DNA of 64,000 nt, from contig NW_019217829.1 of assembly GCF_002571385.2 (NCBI RefSeq), positions 201,364-265,363 on the forward strand. Direction: 5' to 3'. The DNA comes from Stylophora pistillata. Its lineage: Eukaryota. A program made the position numbers and the translations under genes. A model generated the notes under the pieces. It ran no database searches. It worked only from the letters and a program-made list of their open reading frames with translations, and was not told the origin of the DNA. Positions 11,663 to 25,541 of the stretch are shown here, in pieces; the first letter of the stretch is position 1, and each line of letters opens with the position of its first letter.

Positions 11663-14600
11663 ATGGCGTTTATTCCACTCTTATCTTGTTTTCTTCAACT
11701 TCTGGTCCTTCCTAGCGTCAAAGCAGGTTAGTTGAAGCTTCCTAAATCCTAAGAAAACGGTTAAGAGGAGGGAAACTTCTCAAAATATTTTTATCTTTTG
11801 CACTGAGCCGTGTCTAAGCTTTGTTAAACTGGTTTCTGGGGCTTGGAAGAATGTTTTATATGTATTGCATTTAAATTCATCTATTTCGAAGTTTTGAAAT
11901 CACTCGTCAATCGCGTGTTAAAAGAAGCGTTCAAGGTGTTATATTTGTGTTATTTCGTTGAGAAATCAAGTGCATTTGGAATTAAGATGTATCATGACAA
12001 GCTTAAAATCATTCTATTGTTGTCTGGTGTCGACGAACAGTTTTTTGCAACGAGTCATTTATCCTTGAAAAGTTCACAGCGACTGAAAAATTCCTTTAAG
12101 ACGCAATAGAAAAAGTCCTCGATCAGATATTGGCCGAAAGACCAATGAGAAACAAAAATTTTCAGGAGACAGGACAAAAAACACTCTGTGACTCCACAAC
12201 TGTGGTTGTCGATCAGTTATCCAAGTTTTTGGCAATAAATAAATACACCTTATCGATGGTTTAACATATAATACGCGCGAATATTAAACGAGTTGCTTGA
12301 TGTTTTTCCATACCCTCTAGAAGTAATGAGCAAAAGGTCGGTTTTCTTATAAAATACGAACCTTGCAAAAAAAAAAAAAAAAGGCCGGGAAAAGAAAACA
12401 AAGTCGGAATCGTTCAGTGCGGCCATTTTGTTGTGATCCGCTCAACGTGCATATATGTTTGCCTTGATCTACAGAGTAAGAGCACGGCATACTGTACTGC
12501 ATACTGCACCGGTCCGTTTGCCCTATAATACATATGGTAACATGGCGCAATCGTGGAATAATAAAAGGCTTTAACCAGTCGGAAAATGTTTCCACTGTTG
12601 ACTTGGAATTCTGTTTTAGTTGCATTTTGGTTGAGAACGGTATTAAATTTGTAGTGAATTCTTAAATTGTACAAATACATACAAAATCGGTATTCATGCA
12701 TCAAACCTTGTTTTATACGTCATCGCTTAAAAGGAAATGGAAAGATTCAAATCTTCTTTAAATCTTAAAAATAAGACATTTCACTTAATAATTTAATCAA
12801 GTAGCCGCGAACCTTGTGATTTGGAAATCCCGCTTTTCCGGCTCTTTCAACTCAAGTTCTTTCTCTGTCAAAATCATTCAATATTGCTAGGAAATATTCG
12901 GTTATTCCTCAGGAGTTGAAACTTAGGCCTGTTGCATTAATTGGACCCACGACCGACAATCCAACATAGTGCTTCGATACGAATGTTAGGCGTACGAACC
13001 GACAGTATATTGTAAGCACTGGTGAAAATCTCATTCAAAATGAATTAATTATTAAATCGATTTTAATCAAGAATATGTTTTTGTGGTCGAAAATGAAATG
13101 AATCATTCAACCAAATTTAATAAAGAAACTGAGCATTTTTTACGAGTTTAGGTTAGGTGTTTACACCTTTAGTTCATTCGACGGGCCGAGCCCGAAGTTT
13201 GCCATCTTCCTTATCCAATCATGAGACCTAAAGATAAACTTGGTTTTCGCCACTTTTACCACGAAATGGCTTAAAGTGAACCGACTGCGTGACGAAGTGA
13301 CTGGGAGTGTATAACTTTGTCGTTTGCCATCGCATAACGGGAACAGCATCCCTCATAATAGTTAAAGTCTTCTAGCCTTGGGTACTAAACAGTAGTTACA
13401 CTTTCAGGTACCGAAGACCAAGGACCCAGAGATATTTTTGTCTCGCTTTCCGGAAGAGACACAGAAAACTGCGGCCCTGTCGATGAACCTTGTCAGTCAA
13501 TATCGCAAGCACTGGATCTCATAGCCCCTGGCGGATGTATACATCTGAATGGGACTGGAACCATTCAAACACCCTTTAACTGTACCAATCGGATGGCACG
13601 TGATCATTATCAGGGTCTTTATATCAAGAAGAGTGTAACAATGAAAGGTTTTCAGTCGACTCCATATGTGTCATGCGTGGGAGGAATTCACTTTGAAGGT
13701 GACCCAACGGAAAATCGTTCGAAATTTCAAATGATGGTGACTTTATCGGGAATTGTATTCAAGGGAACTCCTATCGAGTTTCAAGACTGTAGTAATATTC
13801 ATCTTATGAACTGTTCACATCAAGAATCTAAAACCGCAGTGAGTGTTCGCGCGCTAAAGGCACCAAGCGTCAGTTTTGATATCCAGGGTCCTTCATTATT
13901 TAGAAACAATTATCACTGCGTGGAAATCTTGTTGCACGGTACCAGCCATCTCATTGCGAGTATCAGTCAAACAAAATTTATATCAAATGGCATTGATGGA
14001 CAACATTCAGCAAAGGGCTTAATTTCTATAATGGAGCGTGCAACAAAAAGTACAAAGCAGTCAGGACCTGTTCAAATTTCATGCTACAAAATCAGCTGCG
14101 TTGGAAACTGGGTCCCCTTTGTGGTTTTAGAACTTAAAGCAGCGGTGACCAAGGAGACATACAGCCACATTGAACTGGTGGACAACAACTTGCAAACGCC
14201 ATTCAGTTCGAAGAGTAGACGCTTTAAGGATAGCATGTATATATCTCGAACAAGGAAAGTCGACGTAACATTCACACACATGCATTGTGCTAACAACAAG
14301 AATGATCAAGCTCTAAGATGTATAAAGATTTATACAGATGAGGCCAAAGTTTCCATCGATCATTCCGCTTTTGTCGGGCAAAATGCTAGCAAGGGCAATG
14401 GTGGTGCTATCTTCCTTGAGTCAACAAAACATGCATCTTTAGTTGTGACAAATACCGTATTTGAAAGAAACGAAGCGAACGCCGGTGGAGCTGTCTACCT
14501 CAACATTGTTCACAATGCGACACTTCAAAACATGAGGCTAAGTTTTACCAATGTTAACTTTACAGAGTGTGTTGCTACCACGGACGGCTCTGCTATTCTG

Positions 14601-17600
14601 GTTGGAAAAACGCACAAGCCACAATCGAAGCCATTAAAATACGCTCTCTATGCATCACTTAAAAAAGTTAATGCGATAAACTGCGTCAGTCATAAATTGA
14701 AATATCGATTTGGCAGCTTTTGCCTCACACTCCATAGCGGACTGGTCATTTTCGACGAGTTCAATTGGACCAACACACGACCAAATGCAGAGAGTGCAGT
14801 CTACATCGGAACAACGGGAGGTAACACGAACGTAACGATTGTTCGATCTTCATTTATCGGTGGCAAATCAAATCAAAGTGCATTCGTTGGGGTCCAGATA
14901 TTTGGAAGACAGAGAGGAATTGTCACGGTCAAAGATACCTCCATGACTAACAACAGCGAAGGCGCTCTAGATATCACTCCTAAATGCAGGATCAGGCTTG
15001 AAAACGTGACGGTAGCCTCCTGTATGTACGGATTGCAGTTGTCCAAAAGATGGTTGAGCCAGGAGACAGGTCGATTCCTTGTCAGCATTCTCATAACCAG
15101 TTGCTCATTCAAGCGCAACGTTTATGACTTATCATTAAATGTTAGCAATCCGCGATCAATTTGGTTAAAAGTTAATGACTCGATCTTTACAGGTCGGCCA
15201 AATCGCCGAGCCAGAAAAGGCTACGCGATCGGCCTCTTTGTTCCGCCTATCAAGAAGAACATGAGTTGCAGCGCCGATATTGAACTAGACAGAGTAACTT
15301 TCCACTCTCGACCATCCAGTATCTTTGTGCTATATTTTAAAGGAAAGAAAACGACAACCATACGTCGAACAGTTTTTCGATACTGCACCGCTCTCAGTAG
15401 ACAACACTTGAACTTTGGCGAACACACGTACATCTATGAGACATCAACGGGAGCTGTCTCGATCCTCTCAATTCCTGATGAACCCTGGAAACTAGGTTGC
15501 GTGCAACGGGACGATATTAACAACACCCACCCTCTGTGGAGATACGAAAGTCACGTGACCATTGAAGACACGTTATTCCAAGAGAATGCTGGATTTTTCG
15601 CAGGCGCCGTGTACATCAGCAATGGAAACACCACATTCAAAAACTGTTCTTTTCAAAATAATCTGGCAATTTGGAAAAGAGGGCAGGTGTATTCTGCCTA
15701 TGGAACAGGCAGAGTGGAATTCAATGATTGTACTTTCTCGAGTAGACAGAACGATAAAGTCATCGACGGCAAAAACGTACATAATGCTGCTTTCTTTTAT
15801 TCCGAAAGTGAAGGACCTATTGTCTTTCGAAACACTACAATGATCTCGACCATCCCGGAAAGGAAGTCTCACTATGTGCTTGAAATCTTTAGCGGAGGCT
15901 ACGTGGACATGGACTACAACACGACAGTACAGTGCAGCAAGGGAAGTATGCTGATACTTGAAAATGCGTCTCACTTCGCTTATACAGAGAAGAGGAGAAG
16001 CTTCTGCAGGGTGAACGTTACAGCTTTTAGGTACGCCTGCAAACTGTGTTCCTCCGGCTACTACAGTCTTGAAACTGGAAAGGCAAACGGTTTTACTGTG
16101 AATACTTCGTTTGAGTGTCACCCTTGTCCGTTAGGAGCAACTTGCATGCGAAATGACATTAACATCGCAGCCAAACCAAACTTCTGGGGATACGAAATGA
16201 GAAATTCCCATCCTTCACCATCATTGAAGTTTATTCCATGTCCTAACAACTACTGCCAATCTCCTAGTAGAAAATCCATAGACTATAACAGTTGTCGTGG
16301 AAACAGGACTGGGTATCTCTGTGGCAAATGTGCTCCGGGATATACCGAGTCGCTATTTAGCACGAGCTGTCGTAAAATGAATCAATGCAGTGACTATCTT
16401 TTGTGGTTGGTGGTCATTCTGTTCACCGCTGGAATGGCAGCATATCTGGTGAAGAAGCCGCCACTCTTGCGATACCTAAGTTTTCGGCAGATCTTCTGGT
16501 TTTTGAAGAACAGAGAGCACAACGAGCTCGAGCCTAGGGAGGAAAGAGGTCAAGTGGACGATGAAGAAACAGACAATGGCTACTTAAAAATTGTTTTCTA
16601 TTACTACCAAGTTGCTGACTTGTTCGTGGATGAATCACTCGCGGAAAAGCTACGCGAACTCCGAATCCCATTCGTGAACATTGTCGTATCTGCGTACAAC
16701 TTTCAGGTTAACTCTATTTACAAAGGTATTGGCTGTCCTTTTGTGGGATTGACTGCAGTGACGAAACAGCTCTTTCTTTCGTTAGATGTTTTTATCACAA
16801 TGGGGAATGTTGTCTTCATTTACTGCGTCCATTTCGTGGTCAACATGGTGCGAAAAAAGAATGCTCCATCAGTACATCATTACATGGCAGTTATCTTGGA
16901 GATTTTGTTGCTAGGCTACGACAGGCTCGCCGAAACCTCGCTGAACTTAATGCATTGTGTTCCTGTAAGATCTGAGCAACGGTTGTTCATCGACGGAAAC
17001 ACCGTTTGCTGGCGACCATGGCAATATGTTCTCCTTGGCTACGGCGTCGTCTTCGTGGTGCCCTTCATCGCCGTTCTTTACTACGGCTCTAAAAAGCTTC
17101 ATAAATCGTCCATTTCTGCAACAATGTTTTTGACCGCCTGTGTCGTGCCTTTGCCATTCCTTGTTTACTGGTTATTCGTGCACGTTTGTAAGAAGAGAGG
17201 AGAGAATTCTGCAACGAGGCCAAACGATGGAGCAGAGGAAGTGAAAAAAGTTTTGCAAGGGCCATTTCGTCGTCCTAATGATCAAGATGGAGATAGAGGG
17301 ACACTCTACTGGGAGAGCGTTTTAATTGGTCGACGCCTCATCCTCCTTTCGGTACACTCTTTTATTCCAAACGCCATGTTACGTGCTCTATTATTGGCTG
17401 TAAGTTGCGAGCTTATGGCGATACATCATTTTGTGAAAAAACCTTTCCAACATATCACAGCCAACAGAGTGGAATCCGTGTCCTTGGTTGTCTTATCCAT
17501 CATGGCGATCATAAATCTCACAAAGGCCACCCTTTTGTCCTCCGGGATCGCTGCTGTGGGAGAAAACAAGCTCTATATCGAGTACATGCAATGGTTTCAA

Positions 17601-17819
17601 ATTGTTTCGTTGGCTTTTGTCCCAGCTCTTTTGATTCTACTTGCTGTCTTCGCAATTCTGTCGCTGATTGTACGTATGGCTGTTACACTCGTCAAAAAAG
17701 TCGCCCAATTCATTCCCTCTGGCCCTAATAAAGTTCTTGTAAGAGGACCACTTCTGGGCGACTGGAGAGGTAACATTCAAGAAGATTATCATAGCCTTGA
17801 TGAGGGAGACGATCATTGA
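11663..17819 (+). CDS. Large surface membrane protein, paralogue A (~1491 aa): signal peptide, beta-helix/PMP-like repeats, Cys-rich linker, polytopic TM domain; join(11663..11726,13408..17819)
   Basis: Exon 1 MAFIPLLSCFLQLLVLPSVKA ends in phase-1 G|GTTAGT. Acceptor tttcAG at 13407 is in frame with the 1408-aa ORF. GGAIF/GGAVY and FxxN motifs, CPLGATC, CRGNRTGYLCGKCAPGY and ~10 hydrophobic segments. Confidence 0.88.
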
Positions 17820-19916
17820 CGTAATTTATTAGGTAATGAGTTCTTTATTCAAATATTCGCACTCGGCAACTTGAGTCATTCGACAACTAATTTGTTTCGA
17901 CAACAAACGGAATCGGCAGCAATTAACTTTAGGTAAGGTTTTTCTGCACATTTGATGTAATAATAACTGACAGATCGTTTGACAGGCAAGAACGTCACTT
18001 TTAGGGCCCTCGTGGTTGTCCATGAGTGATCGCAGGTTAAGAGGAAGAAATGGTTATCCAAAAAATGATTCCACTCCCTCACTTCCTGTCGATGAAGCCA
18101 AATTGTAGAATGCGAATATTTTCGACAACCATCTCTGTAATGTGAAGCTACTAATAGTCGGCGAGCTCAAATGCTCCAAAGAAAAGAAAGTCCGGCTCAC
18201 GAGAAACATGTTTTTGAAAAACAGACTAGGTAAACTGTAAAAGTAAGATTGAGGAAGTGACCTTATTTAAAAATACTCTTTGGAACATTTTCTCACGGTG
18301 AACACTTCTTGTCGATTAATTTATGCGTTTGGGCAGGACATAATTTTTTAGGCAAACTAATCTTAAATGCCTCCTGAAATAAAACTTTACAGCACTTTTG
18401 CAAGTTTTCGAACCCGTGATAAAAAAACTGTAGGTAATGGTGAAATTTAAAGACAATATATGCTTATTAAAGTTTTAAAAGTTTAAGCAACTTGTTGCCC
18501 ACCGTTCTAAATTCTTAATTATTTCGGGATGCGTACTAAATCACAACAAAAATGATACTCAATTTGTGTATATTTGACTGAATACCCCACACGAACATCT
18601 AAATGGCTCAATGCTACTTAGCTCCGGTTGATAGGGATCTTTTAAAAGGAATAAGGACGGGAATGCCGAGGAAGAAGTTGATTAAAAAATGAATTTACAT
18701 TTTTGGTTAGAATCTTGCGAAAGGCTGGATGTGTTTGCCGTCCCGTGCGGCGTCATTCCTGAACATCAGTATAACATGTGTGAGCCCATAAGATCTTAAG
18801 CTTTGTCACGTCCTCGATCTGTCGCCATTGTGGTTTGCTTAAGGTCTACAGTGTTTTCTTTTTTGGATCTGTCTGTGAGTGTGTATATGGGTAGGAAAAT
18901 CAATAAAGTGGGACCGAAACTAAAGCCATAGTATTTTCTTGCCGACAATGACTTCAGCAGCCGTATCGCTCAGCACGAATTTTATAGTTTTCCTGTTCAA
19001 GATTTAACAAAGTCACGTGGCCTAATGTTGAAATAATAATTAATGTAAGGTGTGGTAGGAATCTGCTGAGTATGGAATTCAAAGGTGTTTATATAGCACG
19101 AGCTCATAGAAGAAGGTAAACCCATCCCAAAGAAAAATAATCAGGACTTTGAGTACGATAATGAGCTCTTACCAAATCGGTGGATCAGCGTGGTTTGCGG
19201 ACGCGGAAAACTTTTTTTATCACCTTTTATCACCTCATCTTTAATTTGTTCCCAAGAGTCATGCATGTGCGTAGGAAAAGTGAAATAGTTAAAGATTCCG
19301 CTACGGGGCCATCGCGAAGATCAAGGTTTGTGATGGAAAACTAATGGCATAAATCTGGTAAAAATTAAGCAGAATTCTGTAGAGCGAAGACAGAACAACG
19401 GAGGATGACTGAAATTATGTGAAGAAGGTTACCTTTCTCTGACTTACGTTATAAAAACAGTTTAACTTCCTACATGACCGCTGATCACAAAAATGACCGC
19501 TGTCAGCGAACTGGCGCCACAAAGTTAAGCGCTAAAAGTTTATGTTTGCCATACCGACCAATAAGGTGGCAGCATAAGGTGGTGTTGGGATGATTACATC
19601 TTACTTGTGAATCTAATTATATTATTGTAGGATAATTGTTTCGTGCACGTGATAATGTCATTCTGTCGAGAACGTTTACAAGGATTTACACGAGTCTCAT
19701 GCCACAGGTGAACCCTTAACTTCTGCATCTGCTTTTGTAATTTTCAACTTCTCTAAAAAGGCCTTTATTCAGGGTCACTTTTCCCTGTCTGATGGGTGTC
19801 CCTTGAATGAAGGTTCCTCGCTATTTCATTTTCTAATCGTTTTTAAATACTTTGACATTGCATCCGATGTAGTGAAAGGCTTTCCTTCTTAGTACTACTT
19901 AAGCAGGGCTTTCTCG

Positions 19917-22900
19917 ATGGCGGGCCTTTGGCCATGGCCGGTATCACACCGTCTTGTCTTAATCGTGATCTTCTTTTTTGCTGTAACAGGTAAGTTTTTA
20001 TTTGCTCTCATTTAACCTAAAAATGATCAAAGACAGAAATATTATGACGGTTTAAGTATGCGATGCGGAAGAGCGACGTGGTTGCAACGAAAATTCCATC
20101 TGAAATTTCGATGTAATATTTTGTGATATGTGGTAAGGTTTTTTATTGAAGCGGATCCTTTGCCTGATGACTCCGTGGATCGAACGTTATGTTAATTAAA
20201 TAAATTTACTACAAGTGCCTTACCTTGTTTTTATCCATCTTCCTTGGATTTCTAAAATTCACAATTAGTATATTGGCCACCGTAACGATTACAAAAGCTG
20301 ACGTTTCGAGCGTTAGCCCTTCGCTCCGACGAAGGGCTAACTCTCGAAACGTCAGCTTTTGTAATCGTTACGGTGGCAAATTTACCATTTCAACTTTGTT
20401 GATATATCCAAATTATTTCGTTACTCCCACCGACGCAGCCCCAAACAGTTTCTTTCGAAACTATCAGCCTTTACACATTTAGCACAGTTAATGAAACCAT
20501 CAGCTTGTCAAATCGTTGCAATTAAAAGATAAAACGGGAACATTGTCTAAGAGTGATCTCGGAACCTTTTTGTTGACATCCTCAGAGTTTATTACACGAA
20601 TTTAAAAGAAGTTCAATATATGTTGCGTACGGTTAAATTACACTTAATTTCAGTTTCGGTGGTTGGTATACGCTGACTGCAGAAGGTTTGAGCTTGTATA
20701 GAAAACGGAGATTTCGTCACACAGACTTTTAGTGCTTAAAAAATCAACTCATTCATTCAGTCTTAGACGAGCGGTAATGTACAGTTATGGTCGAATCCAG
20801 AGAGCTCGGTGAATTTTCATGTTTTCGCGGAACCAGGAGTACTCAGTAAATTGAAACTAGAGAGCTACACATGTTTAGTAAGCAAGAAAACTAAAGACAG
20901 CGATTTTCGCTCATACACAGGCATTTGGAGATACCCTTGTTTCCACTGTCACTAGCGGTAATATTAGGATTTTAAAGAAATTGAGTCATTGCGACAACAT
21001 CTTTTTGCGTTTTGGAGTTAGCCGTAAGGCATGCAGTGCGAATTAGTCAGCGAACCGAACACAGAAGCAACTACAGCAACTCTATTTTTACATAGGCTGT
21101 CTTTCTCGCAGTAGAAACTGAAAATCGAAAAGAAATTTTACTCAGCATCCTTCCCTGAGGCACTCTTGAAATTCTAAAGATCATGTTAATTTTTTTGTCG
21201 TGTTAGAACTCTCATAAAAGTCAGTCATTATATCCTAGAGTTTTAATAACTCTGTTTCTTGTTCTACAACTACCTTGCCATGGGTGTCTCGATAAACATA
21301 AAAGTTTGTTTGTTGCATGGAGGCACAGTACATACTTCATTCTTCTATAAGAATATACCTTTTCATGATAAGTTTCCCATGCCTTAGCAACAGTAAATCA
21401 GTCAGGTAACCAGATCAATTGAGATCGAGAACTAAAAGTTTTGGATACCCTCAGGTCACCCTACAGCTAGCTGGAATCCAAAATAATAATTAAGAAGAAT
21501 TAAACATTGAAATTAGTGTAATTTTTTTTTATTCTCACCCATTAAAACTCATTATGGGGATGGATATAAATAGACCGTTTAAAAGTCTTTTTTTTAGTGC
21601 TTACTTTTGGCGTGATGAGTTTGTAGAGTTTGTATGATAAATTTTACCCACCTGTGTTTGCAGATTGCCTTTTGTCAAAGCGACAACGAATAGTCCACGT
21701 TTCAGTATTTGGAAATGACGCTGATGACTGCGGGGCCATAGGGAAACCATGTCGAACAATAGCAGTGGCAGCTTCACGGGTTGCCTCGGGAGGGATCATT
21801 ATGCTGAATGGAACCGGAGCAGAACAGAGACCATTCGACTGTAAAAAGCCAATAACGTGGGGTCAGCGAGGTATCTGGATAAGAAGGAATGTAACAATAA
21901 CTAGTTTAGACCTTACCCGAGCCTGCATACGATGCCTGACGGGGTTTCATTTTTATCGGTCAAACCGAGATCTACGAGTCTCATTAGCTGGAATAACATT
22001 CCTTGAAACACCCCTGAGATTTAAAGACTGTTTTGAAATCACACTTATCAACTGCACTCATCAGAACGCTAAAGAAGCTGTCACTGTTCGCTCTACCAAT
22101 ACCTCAACAGCAAATCTCACCATTCGTGGTTCTCTGTTTCAGAATAACTCTCTTTGTGTGAAAATACAATTTTTTGAAGGCTCTGGGACAGACCTGAAGT
22201 TCTCTTTGGATATCAAGGACACTAAATTCCTGAAGAATGGGTTTTTAGATCATTTTAAAACTCTATTCAGGGGCGCTGTCGAATTTTCAAACGAAGGTAA
22301 TCTTTTCCGCAAGATTTATCCGTCTATCGCTGTTGAAAAGGTAAGGTCCGCTGACAGTGGCGGCCATTTTCTAAAGATCGACCTCCCCACAGCTATTACG
22401 TCAGAAAAGTACGATGACGTCGTCCTTGAGCGGAACAACTTCGATTTCTCTCAGAGAAAGTCTCGTAGTCTTTACTTTTCAAGAGTGTTGAGAGCCAGAG
22501 TAACGTTCGATCGTTTGCAATGCAAGGATAATTATCAGGTTATGTGTGTAAAAATCGACGGAAGGACAAATGCAACAGTTTTTGTCAGAGTCCACGATTC
22601 ATGTTTTCACAATAACAGCGCATACCAAGCGGATAAGTTGTGGTCTGCAATCTTTCGAGTGGTGGGAAGTGAAGGTCATTCTGGAAACGTTACAATTTCT
22701 AATACGCTTTTTGTCAAAAATAACCTAACGGCTATAGGCATAACTCCTAATTTTTATTTTACTTTAGTTAACGTAACGGTGTCTTCTTCACTGAACGGTT
22801 TGCGCATCATCTCCTGGGACCGGCGGAATGAAAACAACTTTAATCTAAGTGTTACTATCGAAGGCTGCAAATTCCAGAAAAACATTCACGACATATATGG

Positions 22901-25541
22901 GTTATTGAACAACACCATAAATATCTTCTTTCGGATGACCAACACGCTGTTTGACGGTAAAGAAATAAAAAGACATGAAAACTCCACTTTTGGAATTCGT
23001 CTCATTACTCCTCACTTGGAGAGGAAAAATTTTTCTGAAACTGCAATTGAATTAGAAGATGTGACCTTCAAAGGCAAGCCTAGCAATTCGTTTACGTTTA
23101 CCTCCGAGGGTAAAAAGACCATTGTTGTTCGCCGTTGTTTGTTTCGAGACGGGTTTGGTCTTGAAATAGACCAATGGAAGAGAGTACATCACAAACACAT
23201 TCCCACTTATACGACTAGTCAAGGAGCACTCTTACTGCTTTTCAATACGGATGCATTAGAGAACAGGGGATGTGTTGACAATGGCGTGACAAATAATACC
23301 CATCGCACGTGGAAATACTCCAGTCACGTCTTGTTCGAGGACACGTTGTTTCAAAACAACCTTGGACACATTGCAGGAGCTGTTCAAATCATTAATGGCT
23401 ATGTTAAATTTCAGAGATGCAAGTTTATTAATAACTTCTCCGAGAGAAACACAGGACAGATTTATGTTGGATACGGAAGTGCCAAAGTTGAGTTCAACAG
23501 CTGCGTGTTCAAACGAACAAAACTAAGCAAGAAATTCCGTGGGATTGCGTTTACTTTCAGCAGATTTTTTTATTCAGAAAGTGGAGGCCCGATAAAAGTA
23601 CTCAACACCTCTTTTTATTCCGGTATGGGCAACAGGCTTACGCCAGGATCTGTTCTACAAATTACATCTGGAGGCTACTTCGAGATGGACTCCAGCTCGA
23701 CAATCCAATGTGCAGTTGGCAGCGAACTCCAATTCTCCAATTTCTCTCATTTTATTTACGACGGAGGAGAAGACAGTCATTTTTGTCGAATCAATTTAAC
23801 AACTGAGATATTCTCTTGCAAAATGTGTCCCCCTAAAATGTACAGTCTTCAAAGTGGATTTTCTAGAGGACTTAAAGTCAGTAAAGGATTCAGATGTCAA
23901 GAGTGTCCTTTTGGTGCTCACTGCAATGGACCCAACAACATTCTGGCAAAGCTCAATTTCTGGGGTTACAAAATCCCCAACGCTAGTAACTTTTCGTCAC
24001 TGAAATTCGTGCCTTGTCCATGGGAGTATTGTCTTCCTCAATCGATATATAAATATCACGGTAATGATTACAACAAGTGCCGTGGCTTTAGGTCTGGTAT
24101 CATGTGCGGGAGATGTGCCACAGGATACTCAGAAACGCTTTTTTCGTCAGAATGTCGACAATCCCACAAATGTAAATGGAATTATCTCTGGGTTCTAATG
24201 GGACTTTACACCGTGTTGTTAACCATTTATCTTTTGAAGAAGCCCCCACTCGTTTTGTATTTGAAACGTCAAATTCTGTGGTTTAAAACAGAAGGGCAGG
24301 CCCCTTTGGAGATAGAGGAACGCTTATCTCTTCATAGAGCTGAAGATCCCGAGTATGGTTATTTAAGGATCGTATTTTATTTCTACCAAGTTGCACAGTT
24401 GCTTCTCACTGATTCATTGGAGGACATTTTGGCAAAAGTTCCTTATATTTCCACCTTAGTTGCGGCCTTTAACTTTAAGGTCCGTGTTTTGGACGAAAAC
24501 ATCGGCTGCCCATTTGCTGGCCTCACAGCAGTGACCAAAGAGCTGTTCTTATCTGCCCTTGTTTTCGCTGCCATTGCACATGTCTTCATAGTTTACTGTC
24601 TTCACAGGTCGCTGAATTTGGTAATAGACAAGGGAAGACCATCATTCACTCATTACGTCGCGGTTGCTGTGGAGATTTTGTTGCTAGGCTACGAGCGCCT
24701 CGCTGAAACATCTCTTAAGCTCTTGCAGTGTGTCCCCATTGGCTCCAAATGGCGCCTTACCATCGACGGCAACACCGTTTGCTGGCAATGGTGGCAGCAT
24801 GGCCTTTTGGCATATATTATTATATTTGTGGTCCCGTTTGTTGGCGTTCTTTATTGGGGTTCTGGCAAGCTTTACGCCAAAGCTATTACATGGAAAGAGT
24901 TTGTCGGCGCTTGCATTGTTCCCCTTCCATTTCTCGTTCGCTGGTTCCTACAAAGTGCCTGCAATAGACAGCCCGGTAGCCAAACTCAATTGCGTCACGA
25001 ATGCACCGACGAAATATCAAAGATATTGCATGGTCCCTTCCGCCCACCAAGTAAAAATGATCGCGGTGTTCTTTACTGGGAAAGTGTTTTGATAGGCAGC
25101 CGGCTCGTCCTTTTGACATTTCGTGCCTTCATTCTAAATTCCATGATTTGCTTCCTCTGCTTGTCCGTGGCCTGTATTCTGATGTTAGTCCATCATCTCG
25201 TCAAGAAACCCTTCCGTCACCCTTCGGCAGAAAAACTCGGAACGTTGTCTTTGATCACGTTGGCCTGCATAGCTGTAATGAACCTTACAACGGCCACTCT
25301 TTCTTCTTCAGCCACCAAACCCGAGGGGCCCAACAAACATATCATGGTGGTGTTTCGATGGATAGTGGTTATCTTACTCTGCTTATTTCCTGCGCTGGTT
25401 GTTCTCCTTGCACTTTTCGCACTAGTGTCACAACTGGCCCGTCTTGCTTTGTTCCTCAAGAGGAAGACATGCGCATTTTTTTGCGCGATAAAATTTCACT
25501 ACGAGTTTCTGGACGAAAGTACCGCTTTGCTGACTGATTGA
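19917..25541 (+). CDS. Large surface membrane protein, paralogue B (~1316 aa), same architecture; join(19917..19989,21664..25541)
   Basis: Exon 1 MAGLWPWPVSHRLVLIVIFFFAVT ends in phase-1 G|GTAAGT. Acceptor tttgcAG at 21663 is in frame with the 1303-aa ORF. Motifs are colinear with paralogue A (EDTLFQ.N, FFYSES.GPI, IGCPF.GLTAVTK, EILLLGY.RLAETSL, LYWESVLIG.RL). Confidence 0.88.
20272..20470. mobile_element. Penelope-like palindromic terminal fragment with variant minimal hammerhead motif, in the intron of paralogue B
   Basis: Inverted pair around cttcgctccgacgaagggctaactctcgaaacgtcagc; relatives at 34313, 42010, 48735 and 54815. Confidence 0.65.

What the first reader, a model, noticed from the sequence alone, without database searches (positions are those of the whole stretch)
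11663..25541. Tandem pair of orphan beta-helix / Cys-rich / polytopic-membrane surface proteins: candidate uncharacterised sensor-receptor or channel system
Seen: two 1.3-1.5k-aa paralogues with identical gene structure (signal-peptide mini-exon, phase-1 intron, one ~4-kb exon). Each has an ectodomain with GGA(I/V) and FxxN repeats, a dense Cys-rich segment and ~9-11 hydrophobic helices with conserved KKPPL, YQVA, GCPFxGLTAVTK, LYWESVLIGxRL and KKPF motifs. Known: GGA(I/L/V)+FxxN repeats typify pectin-lyase-like beta-helices such as Chlamydia Pmp adhesins. I recognise no characterised vertebrate family with this fusion, and the TM block lacks rhodopsin or adhesion-GPCR (GPS) motifs. Inference: a diversifying glycan- or microbe-binding receptor, or a ligand-gated transporter/channel, possibly relevant to symbiont or pathogen recognition.
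Basis: partly seen in the sequence, partly recalled or inferred. Interest (0 to 1): 0.8.

Follow-up and report, generated by a model that had tools for sequence, protein, structure and literature searches.

The report
Coral beta-helix multi-pass receptor-like gene pair
Two neighbouring, transcribed coral genes encode large surface proteins with a sugar-enzyme-like beta-helix outside the cell, a cysteine-rich stalk and a conserved nine-helix membrane domain of no known fold; they are not orphans but belong to a big, unstudied gene family whose function is still untested.

Summary
The window is Stylophora pistillata. Both genes have a signal-peptide mini-exon, a phase-1 GT..AG intron and one ~4-kb exon. 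Gene 1 equals RefSeq LOC111323175, an "uncharacterized protein". The gene-2 splice is seen in an RNA contig.

AlphaFold2 gives a confident right-handed beta-helix ectodomain (pLDDT 88). Its best PDB matches are all beta-helix proteins. After it come a 13-Cys stalk (weak DUF7630 match) and a ~440-aa helical membrane block. That block has no Pfam model and no convincing PDB fold match.

"Orphan pair" is wrong. This genome has about 30 further loci in tandem clusters, some with stop codons. A full-library HMMER search found 2,101 cluster representatives, in stony corals, an anemone, an octocoral and a hemichordate. All named ones are uncharacterized.

The ectodomain changes 2.5-3 times faster than the membrane block, but dN/dS is 0.18-0.42, so positive selection is not shown. 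GGA(I/V) occurs twice in gene 1 and never in gene 2.

Best reading (inferred): N-out, C-in modular sensors in which a variable binding beta-helix is coupled to a conserved, probably dimeric, channel- or transporter-like domain. A language-model lead to fungal Flc/Pkd2 TRP-like domains (PF06011) found no HMM support.

The parts
11664..11727 (+). Gene 1 exon 1, coding part: signal-like peptide MAFIPLLSCFLQLLVLPSVKA plus the first base of a Gly codon (phase 1)
   Evidence: Sequence read. Identical to the N-terminus of NCBI model P0001.
11728..13407 (+). Gene 1 intron (gttagt ... tttcag), 1680 nt
   Evidence: PolyA RNA runs hold 0.71-0.80 of the words of 11600-17900, close to the exonic share of 0.73, while DNA-like runs hold 0.93-0.96. 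P0001 length 1491 = 21 + 1 + 1469.
13408..17819 (+). Gene 1 exon 2 (1469 codons plus stop), 100% identical to LOC111323175 of Stylophora pistillata
13410..16004 (+). Gene 1 right-handed beta-helix ectodomain with an N-terminal cap motif (VSLSGxDxxxCG...PC) and 24 N-glycosylation sequons
   Evidence: AF2 model mfdc4b133f8ab: pLDDT 88, pTM 0.88, all short beta strands. Foldseek top hits are PL6 alginate lyases, rhamnogalacturonan lyase, chondroitinase B, tailspikes and autotransporters. Sequons counted.
16005..16388 (+). Gene 1 Cys-rich stalk (13 Cys, CxxC pairs, NFWGY motif)
   Evidence: Weak DUF7630 (18.3 bits) and laminin-EGF-like hits. DUF7630 hits 16 of 39 relatives, Ephrin_rec_like 2 and DUF7631 3. 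Beta-rich in model mc1f5bbb7ce57, residues 14-129. All 13 Cys are invariant or nearly so.
16389..17714 (+). Gene 1 conserved helical membrane block (~440 aa). Long helices at model residues 136-155, 198-236 (broken), 256-287, 295-321, 343-371, 377-401 (kinked at PLP), 441-458, 462-483, 489-517 and 525-574. Model residue i = window 15990+3(i-1).
   Evidence: AF2. No Pfam model. No PDB fold match. Conserved polar residues Q207 K259 Q345 E442 R448 R449 H479 H480 N492 E495 E537. Loop charge and Cys pattern. Predicted symmetric dimer through 461-482 and 500-529.
17820..18913 (+). Gene 1 3' UTR (approximate end)
   Evidence: RNA contigs of 5.4-6.1 kb run from the coding region to 18896-18916 in four runs.
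19917..19989 (+). Gene 2 exon 1, coding part: MAGLWPWPVSHRLVLIVIFFFAVT plus the first base of an Asp codon (phase 1)
   Evidence: Sequence. An RNA contig covers 19882-19986 and joins to 21661.
19990..21663 (+). Gene 2 intron (gtaagt ... ttgcag), 1674 nt; contains a MITE-like hairpin at 20263-20390
   Evidence: Joint 'skips 1674, GT..AG (cut +3)' in run X12, 72 nt on the shorter side. Inverted repeat found.
21664..25541 (+). Gene 2 exon 2 (1291 codons plus stop). Beta-helix ectodomain about 170 aa shorter than in gene 1. Cys-rich stalk 23784-24173. Membrane block about 24174-25490.
   Evidence: RNA contigs cover 21662-22999 in X1, X2 and X12.

Best explanation
Shown:
- These are two intact, spliced, transcribed members of a large, uncharacterised family of surface proteins. 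The family is greatly multiplied in anthozoans and also occurs in a hemichordate.
- Each protein has a cleavable-looking signal peptide and a heavily glycosylatable right-handed beta-helix ectodomain of about 700-860 aa.
- A 13-Cys stalk of the DUF7631/DUF7630/ephrin-receptor-like kind follows.
- Last comes a ~440-aa all-helical membrane domain. It is the best-conserved long part of the protein and has no Pfam model and no match among solved structures.

Inferred:
- Topology is N-out and C-in, with nine crossings plus a kinked or re-entrant helix at the invariant PLP.
- The fast-changing beta-helix is the ligand-binding part. Its likely ligand is a polysaccharide or glycan surface, by analogy with other beta-helix proteins.
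- The membrane domain is the constant output module. It carries invariant buried polar residues (Q, K, E, RR, HH, N, E). It most likely works as a dimeric channel- or transporter-like transducer rather than as a G-protein-coupled receptor or a mere anchor.
- The tandem arrays with pseudogenes fit a birth-and-death recognition-receptor family.
For: Gene models and expression.

Identity to LOC111323175.

Beta-helix: AF2 pLDDT 88, pTM 0.88. All Foldseek top hits are beta-helix proteins, best E 1e-4, probability up to 1.00. Beta_helix and Chlam_PMP are above cut-off in relatives, for example P0178 at 86 and 118 bits.

Membrane block:
- AF2 pLDDT 77 with 85-96 in most helices.
- No Pfam hit.
- Foldseek has nothing below E 0.04.
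- Conserved polar residues across 308 sequences.
- K+R-rich short loops alternate with Cys-bearing, K/R-poor loops.

Family size: 54 matches in the own genome, of which 14 are full-length without stops and 4 have a single stop. The library holds 2,101 representatives at E <= 1e-3 and 576 at E <= 1e-30.

Modularity: P0135 adds 7 LDLa repeats and P0056 adds collagen repeats.

Domain rates: dN is 0.25-0.35 in the helix against 0.10-0.12 in the membrane block.

Homodimer test: score 0.41, best of 3 controls 0.00. The mark was reached by 21 of 30 proteins solved as pairs of one chain and by 0 of 23 solved as single chains (on eukaryotes 17 of 29 and 0 of 30). The runs agree in at least 97% of contacts, and partner pLDDT is at least 66.
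Against: - There is no functional datum of any kind. Ligand, localisation and activity are all inferred.
- dN/dS is below 1 in all domains, so the data do not show positive selection on the ectodomain.
- The beta-helix fold is equally typical of enzymes.
- Topology rests on charge and Cys counts, not on a dedicated predictor.
- The dimer prediction is a model's own confidence. It was made without my alignment, and its calibration on eukaryotic proteins without older solved relatives is weak (1 of 7).
- No comparison with predicted-structure libraries (AlphaFold DB) was possible, so 'no known fold' means only 'none among solved structures'.
Confidence: 0.5

Rival explanations
1. Membrane-tethered carbohydrate-active enzyme. 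The beta-helix would be a polysaccharide lyase, hydrolase or epimerase acting on mucus, extracellular matrix or algal or bacterial glycans, as TMEM2/CEMIP-type PbH1 proteins do on hyaluronan (from general knowledge). The membrane block would anchor it or move the product.
For: The best structural matches are PL6 alginate lyases, rhamnogalacturonan lyase, GH87, GH55 and chondroitinase B.
Against: - Identity to these enzymes is 7-12% and TM-scores are 0.15-0.46.
- The nearly invariant ectodomain columns are C, G, F and N, which are fold-building residues, apart from one D, one R, one T and one S.
- The ectodomain is the least conserved part: 26% mean identity among 12 paralogues. Gene 2 has lost about 170 aa of it.
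- A mere anchor would not be the most conserved region, nor carry invariant charged residues.
Confidence: 0.15
2. Distant metazoan branch of the fungal Flc/Pkd2 'TRP-like' family (PF06011). The membrane block would be a Ca2+-permeable or flavin-related channel or carrier domain that has swapped the fungal ML-like ectodomain for a beta-helix. This is a special case of the best explanation, not an alternative to its architecture.
For: - The language-model feature search with the membrane block alone gave 10 of 30 best clusters with PF06011 (score 0.92, 211 of 256 features shared). It also gave ~385-aa hypothetical proteins of haptophytes and ciliates (0.92-0.95).
- The layout is the same: signal peptide, lumenal or extracellular domain, multi-helix domain. 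Flc1 consists of TRP_N plus TRP, per PMC9600462.
Against: - No PF06011 hit, even at E <= 1, in the two proteins or in 39 family members. None at E <= 0.001-0.05 in 58 more.
- The Atlas states that its figures were not measured for parts of proteins, and that such rows are only leads.
- PF06011 found nothing in this genome, but the control genomes were silent too, so that search says nothing.
Confidence: 0.2
3. Unusual G-protein-coupled receptor with extra helices, comparable to class C/F or adhesion GPCRs that carry large ectodomains and Cys-rich stalks.
For: Weak Foldseek rows for mGlu5, SMO, CaSR and several class A receptors (E 0.05-0.35, probability <= 0.28). The overall logic is ectodomain, then Cys-rich stalk, then helical bundle.
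Against: - TM-scores are 0.10-0.22 with rmsd 17-30 A.
- No GPCR appears among the 50 best of 48,161 chains aligned without Foldseek.
- There is no 7tm, GPS or GAIN Pfam hit.
Confidence: 0.05
4. Purely adhesive or structural surface protein (Pmp/autotransporter-like adhesin logic) in which the membrane block has no signalling role.
For: Beta-helix adhesins (Ag43, Vag8, PfbA) are among the structural matches. The ectodomain is heavily glycosylatable.
Against: The membrane block and stalk are conserved far better than the ectodomain. The same block sits under different ectodomain additions. A single helix would suffice as an anchor.
Confidence: 0.1

Closest known systems
Chlamydia polymorphic membrane proteins (Pmp; Pfam PF02415 repeats on a beta-helix passenger)
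   Same: Right-handed beta-helix built of short coils. The GGA(I/L/V)/FxxN repeat signature is clear in some family members (P0178 at 118 bits) and vestigial in gene 1, which has two GGA motifs.
   Different: Pmps are bacterial autotransporters with a C-terminal beta-barrel. Here the C-terminus is a eukaryotic multi-helix membrane domain preceded by a Cys-rich stalk, and the gene has a spliceosomal intron. Gene 1 and gene 2 themselves fail the PF02415 cut-off.
Pectin-lyase-like beta-helix enzymes (PL6 alginate lyases such as AlyGC 5gkq, chondroitinase B 1dbg, rhamnogalacturonan lyase 5olq)
   Same: Best structural matches of the ectodomain model.
   Different: Identity is 8-12%. No catalytic residues were identified. 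The coral proteins are membrane-bound, multiplied and fast-evolving in this domain.
Fungal Flc/Pkd2 TRP-like proteins (TRP_N PF14558 + TRP PF06011; PMC9600462, PMC8618638)
   Same: Signal peptide, extracytosolic N-terminal domain and a ~400-aa multi-helix domain. PF06011 clusters are among the nearest neighbours of the membrane block by language-model features.
   Different: No HMM match to PF06011. The ectodomain differs (beta-helix plus Cys stalk instead of ML-like).
Pfam DUF7630/DUF7631 and ephrin-receptor-like/laminin-EGF Cys-rich modules
   Same: The stalk gives sub-threshold to threshold hits. DUF7630 scores 18.3 bits in gene 1 and 27.0 bits in P0178, and hits 16 of 39 relatives. DUF7631 lies just N-terminal of it.
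   Different: These are small domains of unknown function. They say nothing about the membrane block.

Membership tests
Chlamydia Pmp / Chlam_PMP repeat proteins | Multiple GGA(I/L/V) and FxxN repeats; PF02415 above 20.6 bits | tested here: not met
   Gene 1 scores 10.8 bits (E 0.7) and gene 2 has no hit. GGA[ILV] occurs 2 and 0 times, and FxxN is not above shuffles. The feature is met in some relatives: 16 of 41, best 117.7 bits.
Chlamydia Pmp / type V autotransporters | C-terminal outer-membrane beta-barrel translocator | tested here: not met
   The C-terminal 440 aa are all-helical in AF2. There is no autotransporter Pfam hit.
Right-handed parallel beta-helix (pectin-lyase-like fold) | Stack of three-stranded coils forming a long right-handed beta-helix | tested here: met
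   AF2 model of 867 aa, pLDDT 88, pTM 0.88, with about 75 short strands. The 50 listed Foldseek matches are nearly all beta-helix proteins. PF13229 is above cut-off in many relatives.
TRP-like Flc/Pkd2 family (PF06011) | Match to the PF06011 profile at or above 28.5 bits | tested here: not met
   No hit at E <= 1 in the two window proteins or in 39 members. None at E <= 0.001-0.05 in 58 more.
TRP-like Flc/Pkd2 family (PF06011) | Shared fold of the ~9-helix domain | not testable with these tools
   No PF06011 member's sequence or structure could be obtained. The searches found no solved structure. The only pointer is an Atlas feature lead.
GPCRs (rhodopsin-like, adhesion, class C/F) | Seven-helix bundle; GPS/GAIN for the adhesion class | tested here: not met
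   Foldseek E >= 0.05 and TM-scores 0.10-0.22. No GPCR is among the VIA top 50. No 7tm or GPS Pfam hits.
Pentameric ligand-gated ion channels | Cys-loop beta-sandwich ectodomain plus a four-helix membrane bundle | tested here: not met
DUF7630-containing Cys-rich stalk proteins | PF24633 at or above 27 bits | tested here: inconclusive
   Gene 1 scores 18.3 bits. P0178 scores 27.0 bits. 16 of 39 relatives hit at E <= 1.

The most novel reading that the evidence does not exclude
The ~440-aa membrane block is a previously unrecognised, eukaryote-wide transducer or channel domain. It works as a dimer and is plugged under interchangeable ectodomains: a beta-helix, with LDLa or collagen repeats added to it in some members, and possibly LRR in sponges. 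In corals its tandem expansion would supply a repertoire of receptors for microbial, algal-symbiont or settlement-cue glycans.
Probability: 0.25. Interest if true: 0.85.

Novelty: new variant of a known kind. Interest (0 to 1): 0.55.

Why it matters
Corals depend on recognising symbionts, pathogens and settlement cues, yet few of their surface receptors are known. This family has about 30 loci in one coral genome and more than 2,000 sequence clusters in public data. It is transcribed in adult colonies. Its conserved membrane domain has no Pfam model and no solved-structure relative. If that domain is a channel or transducer gated by a glycan-binding beta-helix, it would define a new receptor class for marine invertebrates. 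It would also give concrete candidates for symbiosis and immunity studies. If it proves to be a branch of the fungal Flc/Pkd2 TRP-like family, it would extend that poorly understood family into animals.

Tried and rejected
- Word-indexed protein search with the hemichordate member P0128 returned only itself. It was uninformative because the candidate list was saturated.
- Profile search with the membrane-block alignment A2 returned only close coral relatives in the 120 rows shown. It gave no view of the distant tail.
- PF06011 in the own genome found nothing, but the 14 control genomes were silent as well, so the result carries no weight.
- Foldseek and VIA-align against 48,161 chains gave no convincing match for the stalk plus membrane model. 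The pLGIC, MscS-like and LRRC8 rows are generic four-helix bundles.
- A profile of A2 against PDB sequences gave one chance-level row, WRB at E 0.36.
- hhalign of the two halves of the membrane block found no internal repeat (probability 0.3).
- Cluster look-ups for 30 distant hits gave names for only five.
- One contig look-up gave no organism.
- Six literature searches found no paper on the family.
- dN/dS for gene 1 against gene 2 is saturated at synonymous sites, so only closer paralogue pairs were used.
- The reading 'broken or silent pseudogenes' was rejected: both reading frames are open and RNA contigs cover both genes.
- The spliced proteins were never joined. Each large exon was searched by reference. 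The 21- and 24-residue exon-1 peptides were only read, not searched.

Full report
WHAT IS THERE

The window is from the stony coral Stylophora pistillata. The translation of window:13410-17816:+ is 100% identical over its full length to NCBI 'uncharacterized protein LOC111323175 [Stylophora pistillata]'. That protein is P0001, 1491 aa, and UniRef names it 'Right handed beta helix domain-containing protein'.

Two long + strand open frames stand out: 13593-17819 and 21630-25541. Upstream of each lies a short exon.

- Gene 1. ATG at 11664, then 21 codons of a typical signal peptide (MAFIPLLSCFLQLLVLPSVKA) plus one base. The donor is gttagt at 11728. The acceptor ag is at 13406-13407.
- Gene 2. 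ATG at 19917, then 24 codons (MAGLWPWPVSHRLVLIVIFFFAVT) plus one base. The donor is gtaagt at 19990. The acceptor ag is at 21662-21663.

The N-terminus of P0001 is exactly the spliced gene-1 model.

Each large exon was searched by reference, and the short exon-1 peptides were only read.

EXPRESSION

PolyA RNA-seq runs of the same organism hold 0.71-0.80 of the sampled words of 11600-17900. The exonic share of that stretch is 0.73. DNA-like runs hold 0.93-0.96.

I laid RNA contigs on 17000-22999. Contigs of 5.4-6.1 kb run through the gene-1 stop codon to about 18896-18916, which gives a 3' UTR of about 1.1 kb. One contig of run X12 joins 19986 to 21661 (equivalently 19989 to 21664), skipping 1674 nt with GT..AG ends. 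That is precisely the predicted gene-2 splice. Further contigs cover gene-2 exon 2 in three runs.

These are assembled contigs, so they show presence and not expression level.

THE TWO PROTEINS

They are 44% identical over the C-terminal 940 residues and 28% identical over the N-terminal 330. Gene 2 lacks about 170 residues of the ectodomain.

The motifs KKPPL, YQVA, GCPFxGLTAVTK, LYWESVLIGxRL and KKPF occur once in each protein, at matching positions. Thirteen cysteines in the same pattern precede the first hydrophobic helix. In gene 1, 24 of 25 N-glycosylation sequons lie before that helix, and in gene 2, 22 of 23.

The repeat claim is weaker than stated. GGA[ILV] occurs twice in gene 1 and never in gene 2. 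FxxN occurs 6 and 7 times and is reached by 44 and 77 of 500 shuffles. Pfam gives nothing above its cut-offs for either protein. The rows are DUF7630 at 18.3 bits, Chlam_PMP at 10.8 bits, and Lig_chan at E 0.15 in gene 2. NCBIfam gives nothing.

STRUCTURE

Ectodomain. I folded window:13410-16010:+ with a 57-sequence alignment. The model has mean pLDDT 88 and pTM 0.88 and consists of about 75 short strands.

Foldseek against the PDB returned almost only right-handed beta-helix proteins:

- PL6 alginate lyases, best E 1e-4;
- rhamnogalacturonan lyase, probability 1.00;
- GH87 glucanase;
- chondroitinase B, probability 0.99 and TM-score 0.46 on the target;
- phage tailspikes and the autotransporters Ag43 and Vag8.

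Identity is 7-12% and TM-scores are low, as expected for long solenoids of different length. The fold class is therefore supported, and nothing more specific.

Stalk plus membrane block. I folded window:15990-17816:+ with a 45-sequence alignment. Mean pLDDT is 77, pTM is 0.71, and most long helices score 85-96. The model shows:

- a beta-rich Cys module (residues 14-129);
- a first membrane helix (136-155);
- a poorly predicted acidic loop;
- short helices (198-236);
- long helices at 256-287 and 295-321;
- a beta hairpin (323-332) flanked by two invariant Cys;
- helices at 343-371, 377-401 (kinked at an invariant PLP), 413-426, 441-458, 462-483, 489-517 and 525-574.

So the membrane block has no relative among solved structures. 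Predicted-structure libraries of cellular proteins were not available.

FAMILY

A full HMMER pass with the stalk plus membrane block over 1.84 billion cluster representatives found 2,101 proteins at E <= 1e-3, 1,369 at E <= 1e-10 and 576 at E <= 1e-30. Most are 1,000-1,700 aa and carry the block at the C-terminus.

Named members come from these taxa:

- Scleractinia: Stylophora, Pocillopora, Porites, Oculina, Desmophyllum;
- Actiniaria: Actinia tenebrosa;
- Octocorallia: Dendronephthya gigantea;
- Hemichordata: Ptychodera flava.

All are 'uncharacterized' or 'hypothetical'.

Pfam scans of 39 short and 41 distant members gave only Chlam_PMP (16 of 41, best 1.5e-35), Beta_helix (11 of 41), DUF7630, DUF7631, Ephrin_rec_like and, in one protein, seven LDLa repeats. 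Nothing ever fell on the membrane block. Another distant member carries collagen repeats.

In the coral's own genome the block matches 54 places, which group into about 30 loci. Most sit in tandem clusters on contigs C463, C943, C47, C77, C117 and C337. Fourteen matches are full-length without stops, four have a single stop, and several are fragmented.

Ten paralogues that I cut out have single open frames of 1,242-1,479 aa. Most of them begin just before the conserved N-terminal cap motif, so they share the one-big-exon structure.

The pair is therefore not orphan and not a two-gene system. It is one small tandem array of a birth-and-death family.

RATES OF CHANGE

Among 12 paralogues the mean pairwise identity is 26% in the beta-helix, 44% in the stalk and 39% in the membrane block.

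| Paralogue pair | dN, helix | dN, membrane block |
|---|---|---|
| L013/L014 | 0.25 | 0.10 |
| L015/L016 | 0.35 | 0.12 |

In these two closest pairs, dN/dS is 0.18-0.42 in every domain. The ectodomain is thus under weaker constraint. Gene-wide positive selection is not shown. Site-level tests would need orthologue sets that I did not have.

THE MEMBRANE BLOCK IN DETAIL

Across 308 non-identical family sequences the positions conserved at 85% or more include polar residues inside or at the ends of predicted helices. In model numbering these are Q207, K259, Q345, E442, R448, R449, H479, H480, N492, E495 and E537. Also conserved are the motifs GCPF, PLP and GPF, and three Cys (249, 323, 340).

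Loop composition points to sidedness:

- The short loops 288-294, 372-376 and 484-488 are rich in K and R.
- Loops 322-342 (two Cys), 459-461 and 518-524 are poor in them.

Together with the glycosylated N-terminus, this fits N-out and C-in with nine crossings. One crossing would lie within 198-236, and 377-401 would not cross fully. This topology is an inference.

A homodimer prediction for residues 134-575 scored 0.41, and the best of 3 controls scored 0.00. The mark was reached by 21 of 30 proteins solved as pairs of one chain and by 0 of 23 solved as single chains. On eukaryotes the counts were 17 of 29 and 0 of 30, but only 1 of the 7 with no older solved relative reached it. The runs agree in at least 97% of contacts, and partner pLDDT is at least 66. 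The symmetric interface uses helices 461-482 and 500-529, next to the invariant HH. This supports dimerisation but does not show it.

WHAT IT MOST LIKELY IS

Shown: a signal peptide, a glycosylatable beta-helix, a Cys stalk and a conserved multi-helix domain. The genes are transcribed, multiplied in tandem and present across anthozoans and in a hemichordate.

Inferred: the beta-helix is the variable ligand-binding part, and the membrane block is the constant output module. The reasons for preferring a transducer (channel- or transporter-like) over a mere anchor are these:

- the block is long;
- it is better conserved than the ectodomain;
- it holds invariant charged and histidine residues;
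- it recurs under ectodomains with different additions;
- it is predicted to pair.

THE FLC/PKD2 LEAD AND THE RIVALS

It reappears as a language-model lead: 10 of the 30 nearest clusters to the membrane block carry it (score 0.92). Alongside are ~385-aa hypothetical proteins of haptophytes and ciliates. The domain order resembles that of Flc1, which is TRP_N plus TRP (PMC9600462).

However, no HMM scan of any family member touched PF06011, and I could not bring a PF06011 protein into the session for a profile or fold comparison. I rate that link at about 0.2.

An enzyme reading of the beta-helix (0.15), a plain adhesin (0.10) and a GPCR (0.05) are less likely, for the reasons given under the rival explanations.

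NOVELTY

The gene models exist in RefSeq, but I found no paper and no named family. Pfam covers only the two small Cys modules, both as domains of unknown function.

I class the family as a new variant of a known kind, namely a modular surface receptor. The open possibility is that the membrane block is a new domain class.

CONSTRAINTS

No N runs were filled. The paralogue loci L010, L011, L019 and L021 contain masked stretches or gaps, which were left as they are and kept out of the rate analysis.

Noticed in passing
window 20263-20390 (inside the gene-2 intron): Hairpin with 61-nt arms, 92% complementary, 6-nt spacer. RNA contigs from all four runs pile up on 20200-20600 at summed depths around 2e5, with dozens of contigs and many different loose ends. 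It looks like a dispersed MITE-like repeat carried in many transcripts.
   Followed up: partly
window 26001-28100: GC falls to 0.285. Three overlapping ORFs of 224-235 aa lie on both strands at 27362-28100 and have no Pfam hit. Probably a low-complexity or repeat stretch, not a gene.
   Followed up: partly
window ~11130-11663 and 17820-18913: Gene-1 mRNA contigs of up to 6,088 nt imply about 0.5 kb of 5' UTR or an additional 5' exon upstream of the start codon, and a 3' UTR of about 1.1 kb. The 5' end was not resolved because only one read-laying run was available.
   Followed up: no
G000 contigs C463:201015-243836, C943:3507-75340, C47:431943-478763, C77:754244-775170, C117:462969-484350: Tandem clusters of 4-5 family copies each. 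They mix intact ~1,450-aa open frames with copies that carry stop codons or survive only as fragments. This is a birth-and-death pattern that deserves its own survey.
   Followed up: partly
P0135 and P0056 (distant family members, not in the window): P0135 carries seven LDL-receptor class A repeats in front of the beta-helix. P0056 combines collagen repeats with Chlam_PMP repeats. Together they show shuffling of ectodomain modules on the same membrane block.
   Followed up: no
window 633-1721, 8454-9236, 55888-56394, 61955-62608: Open frames of 168-362 aa with no Pfam match. They may be exons of unannotated genes or chance ORFs. I did not examine it.
   Followed up: no
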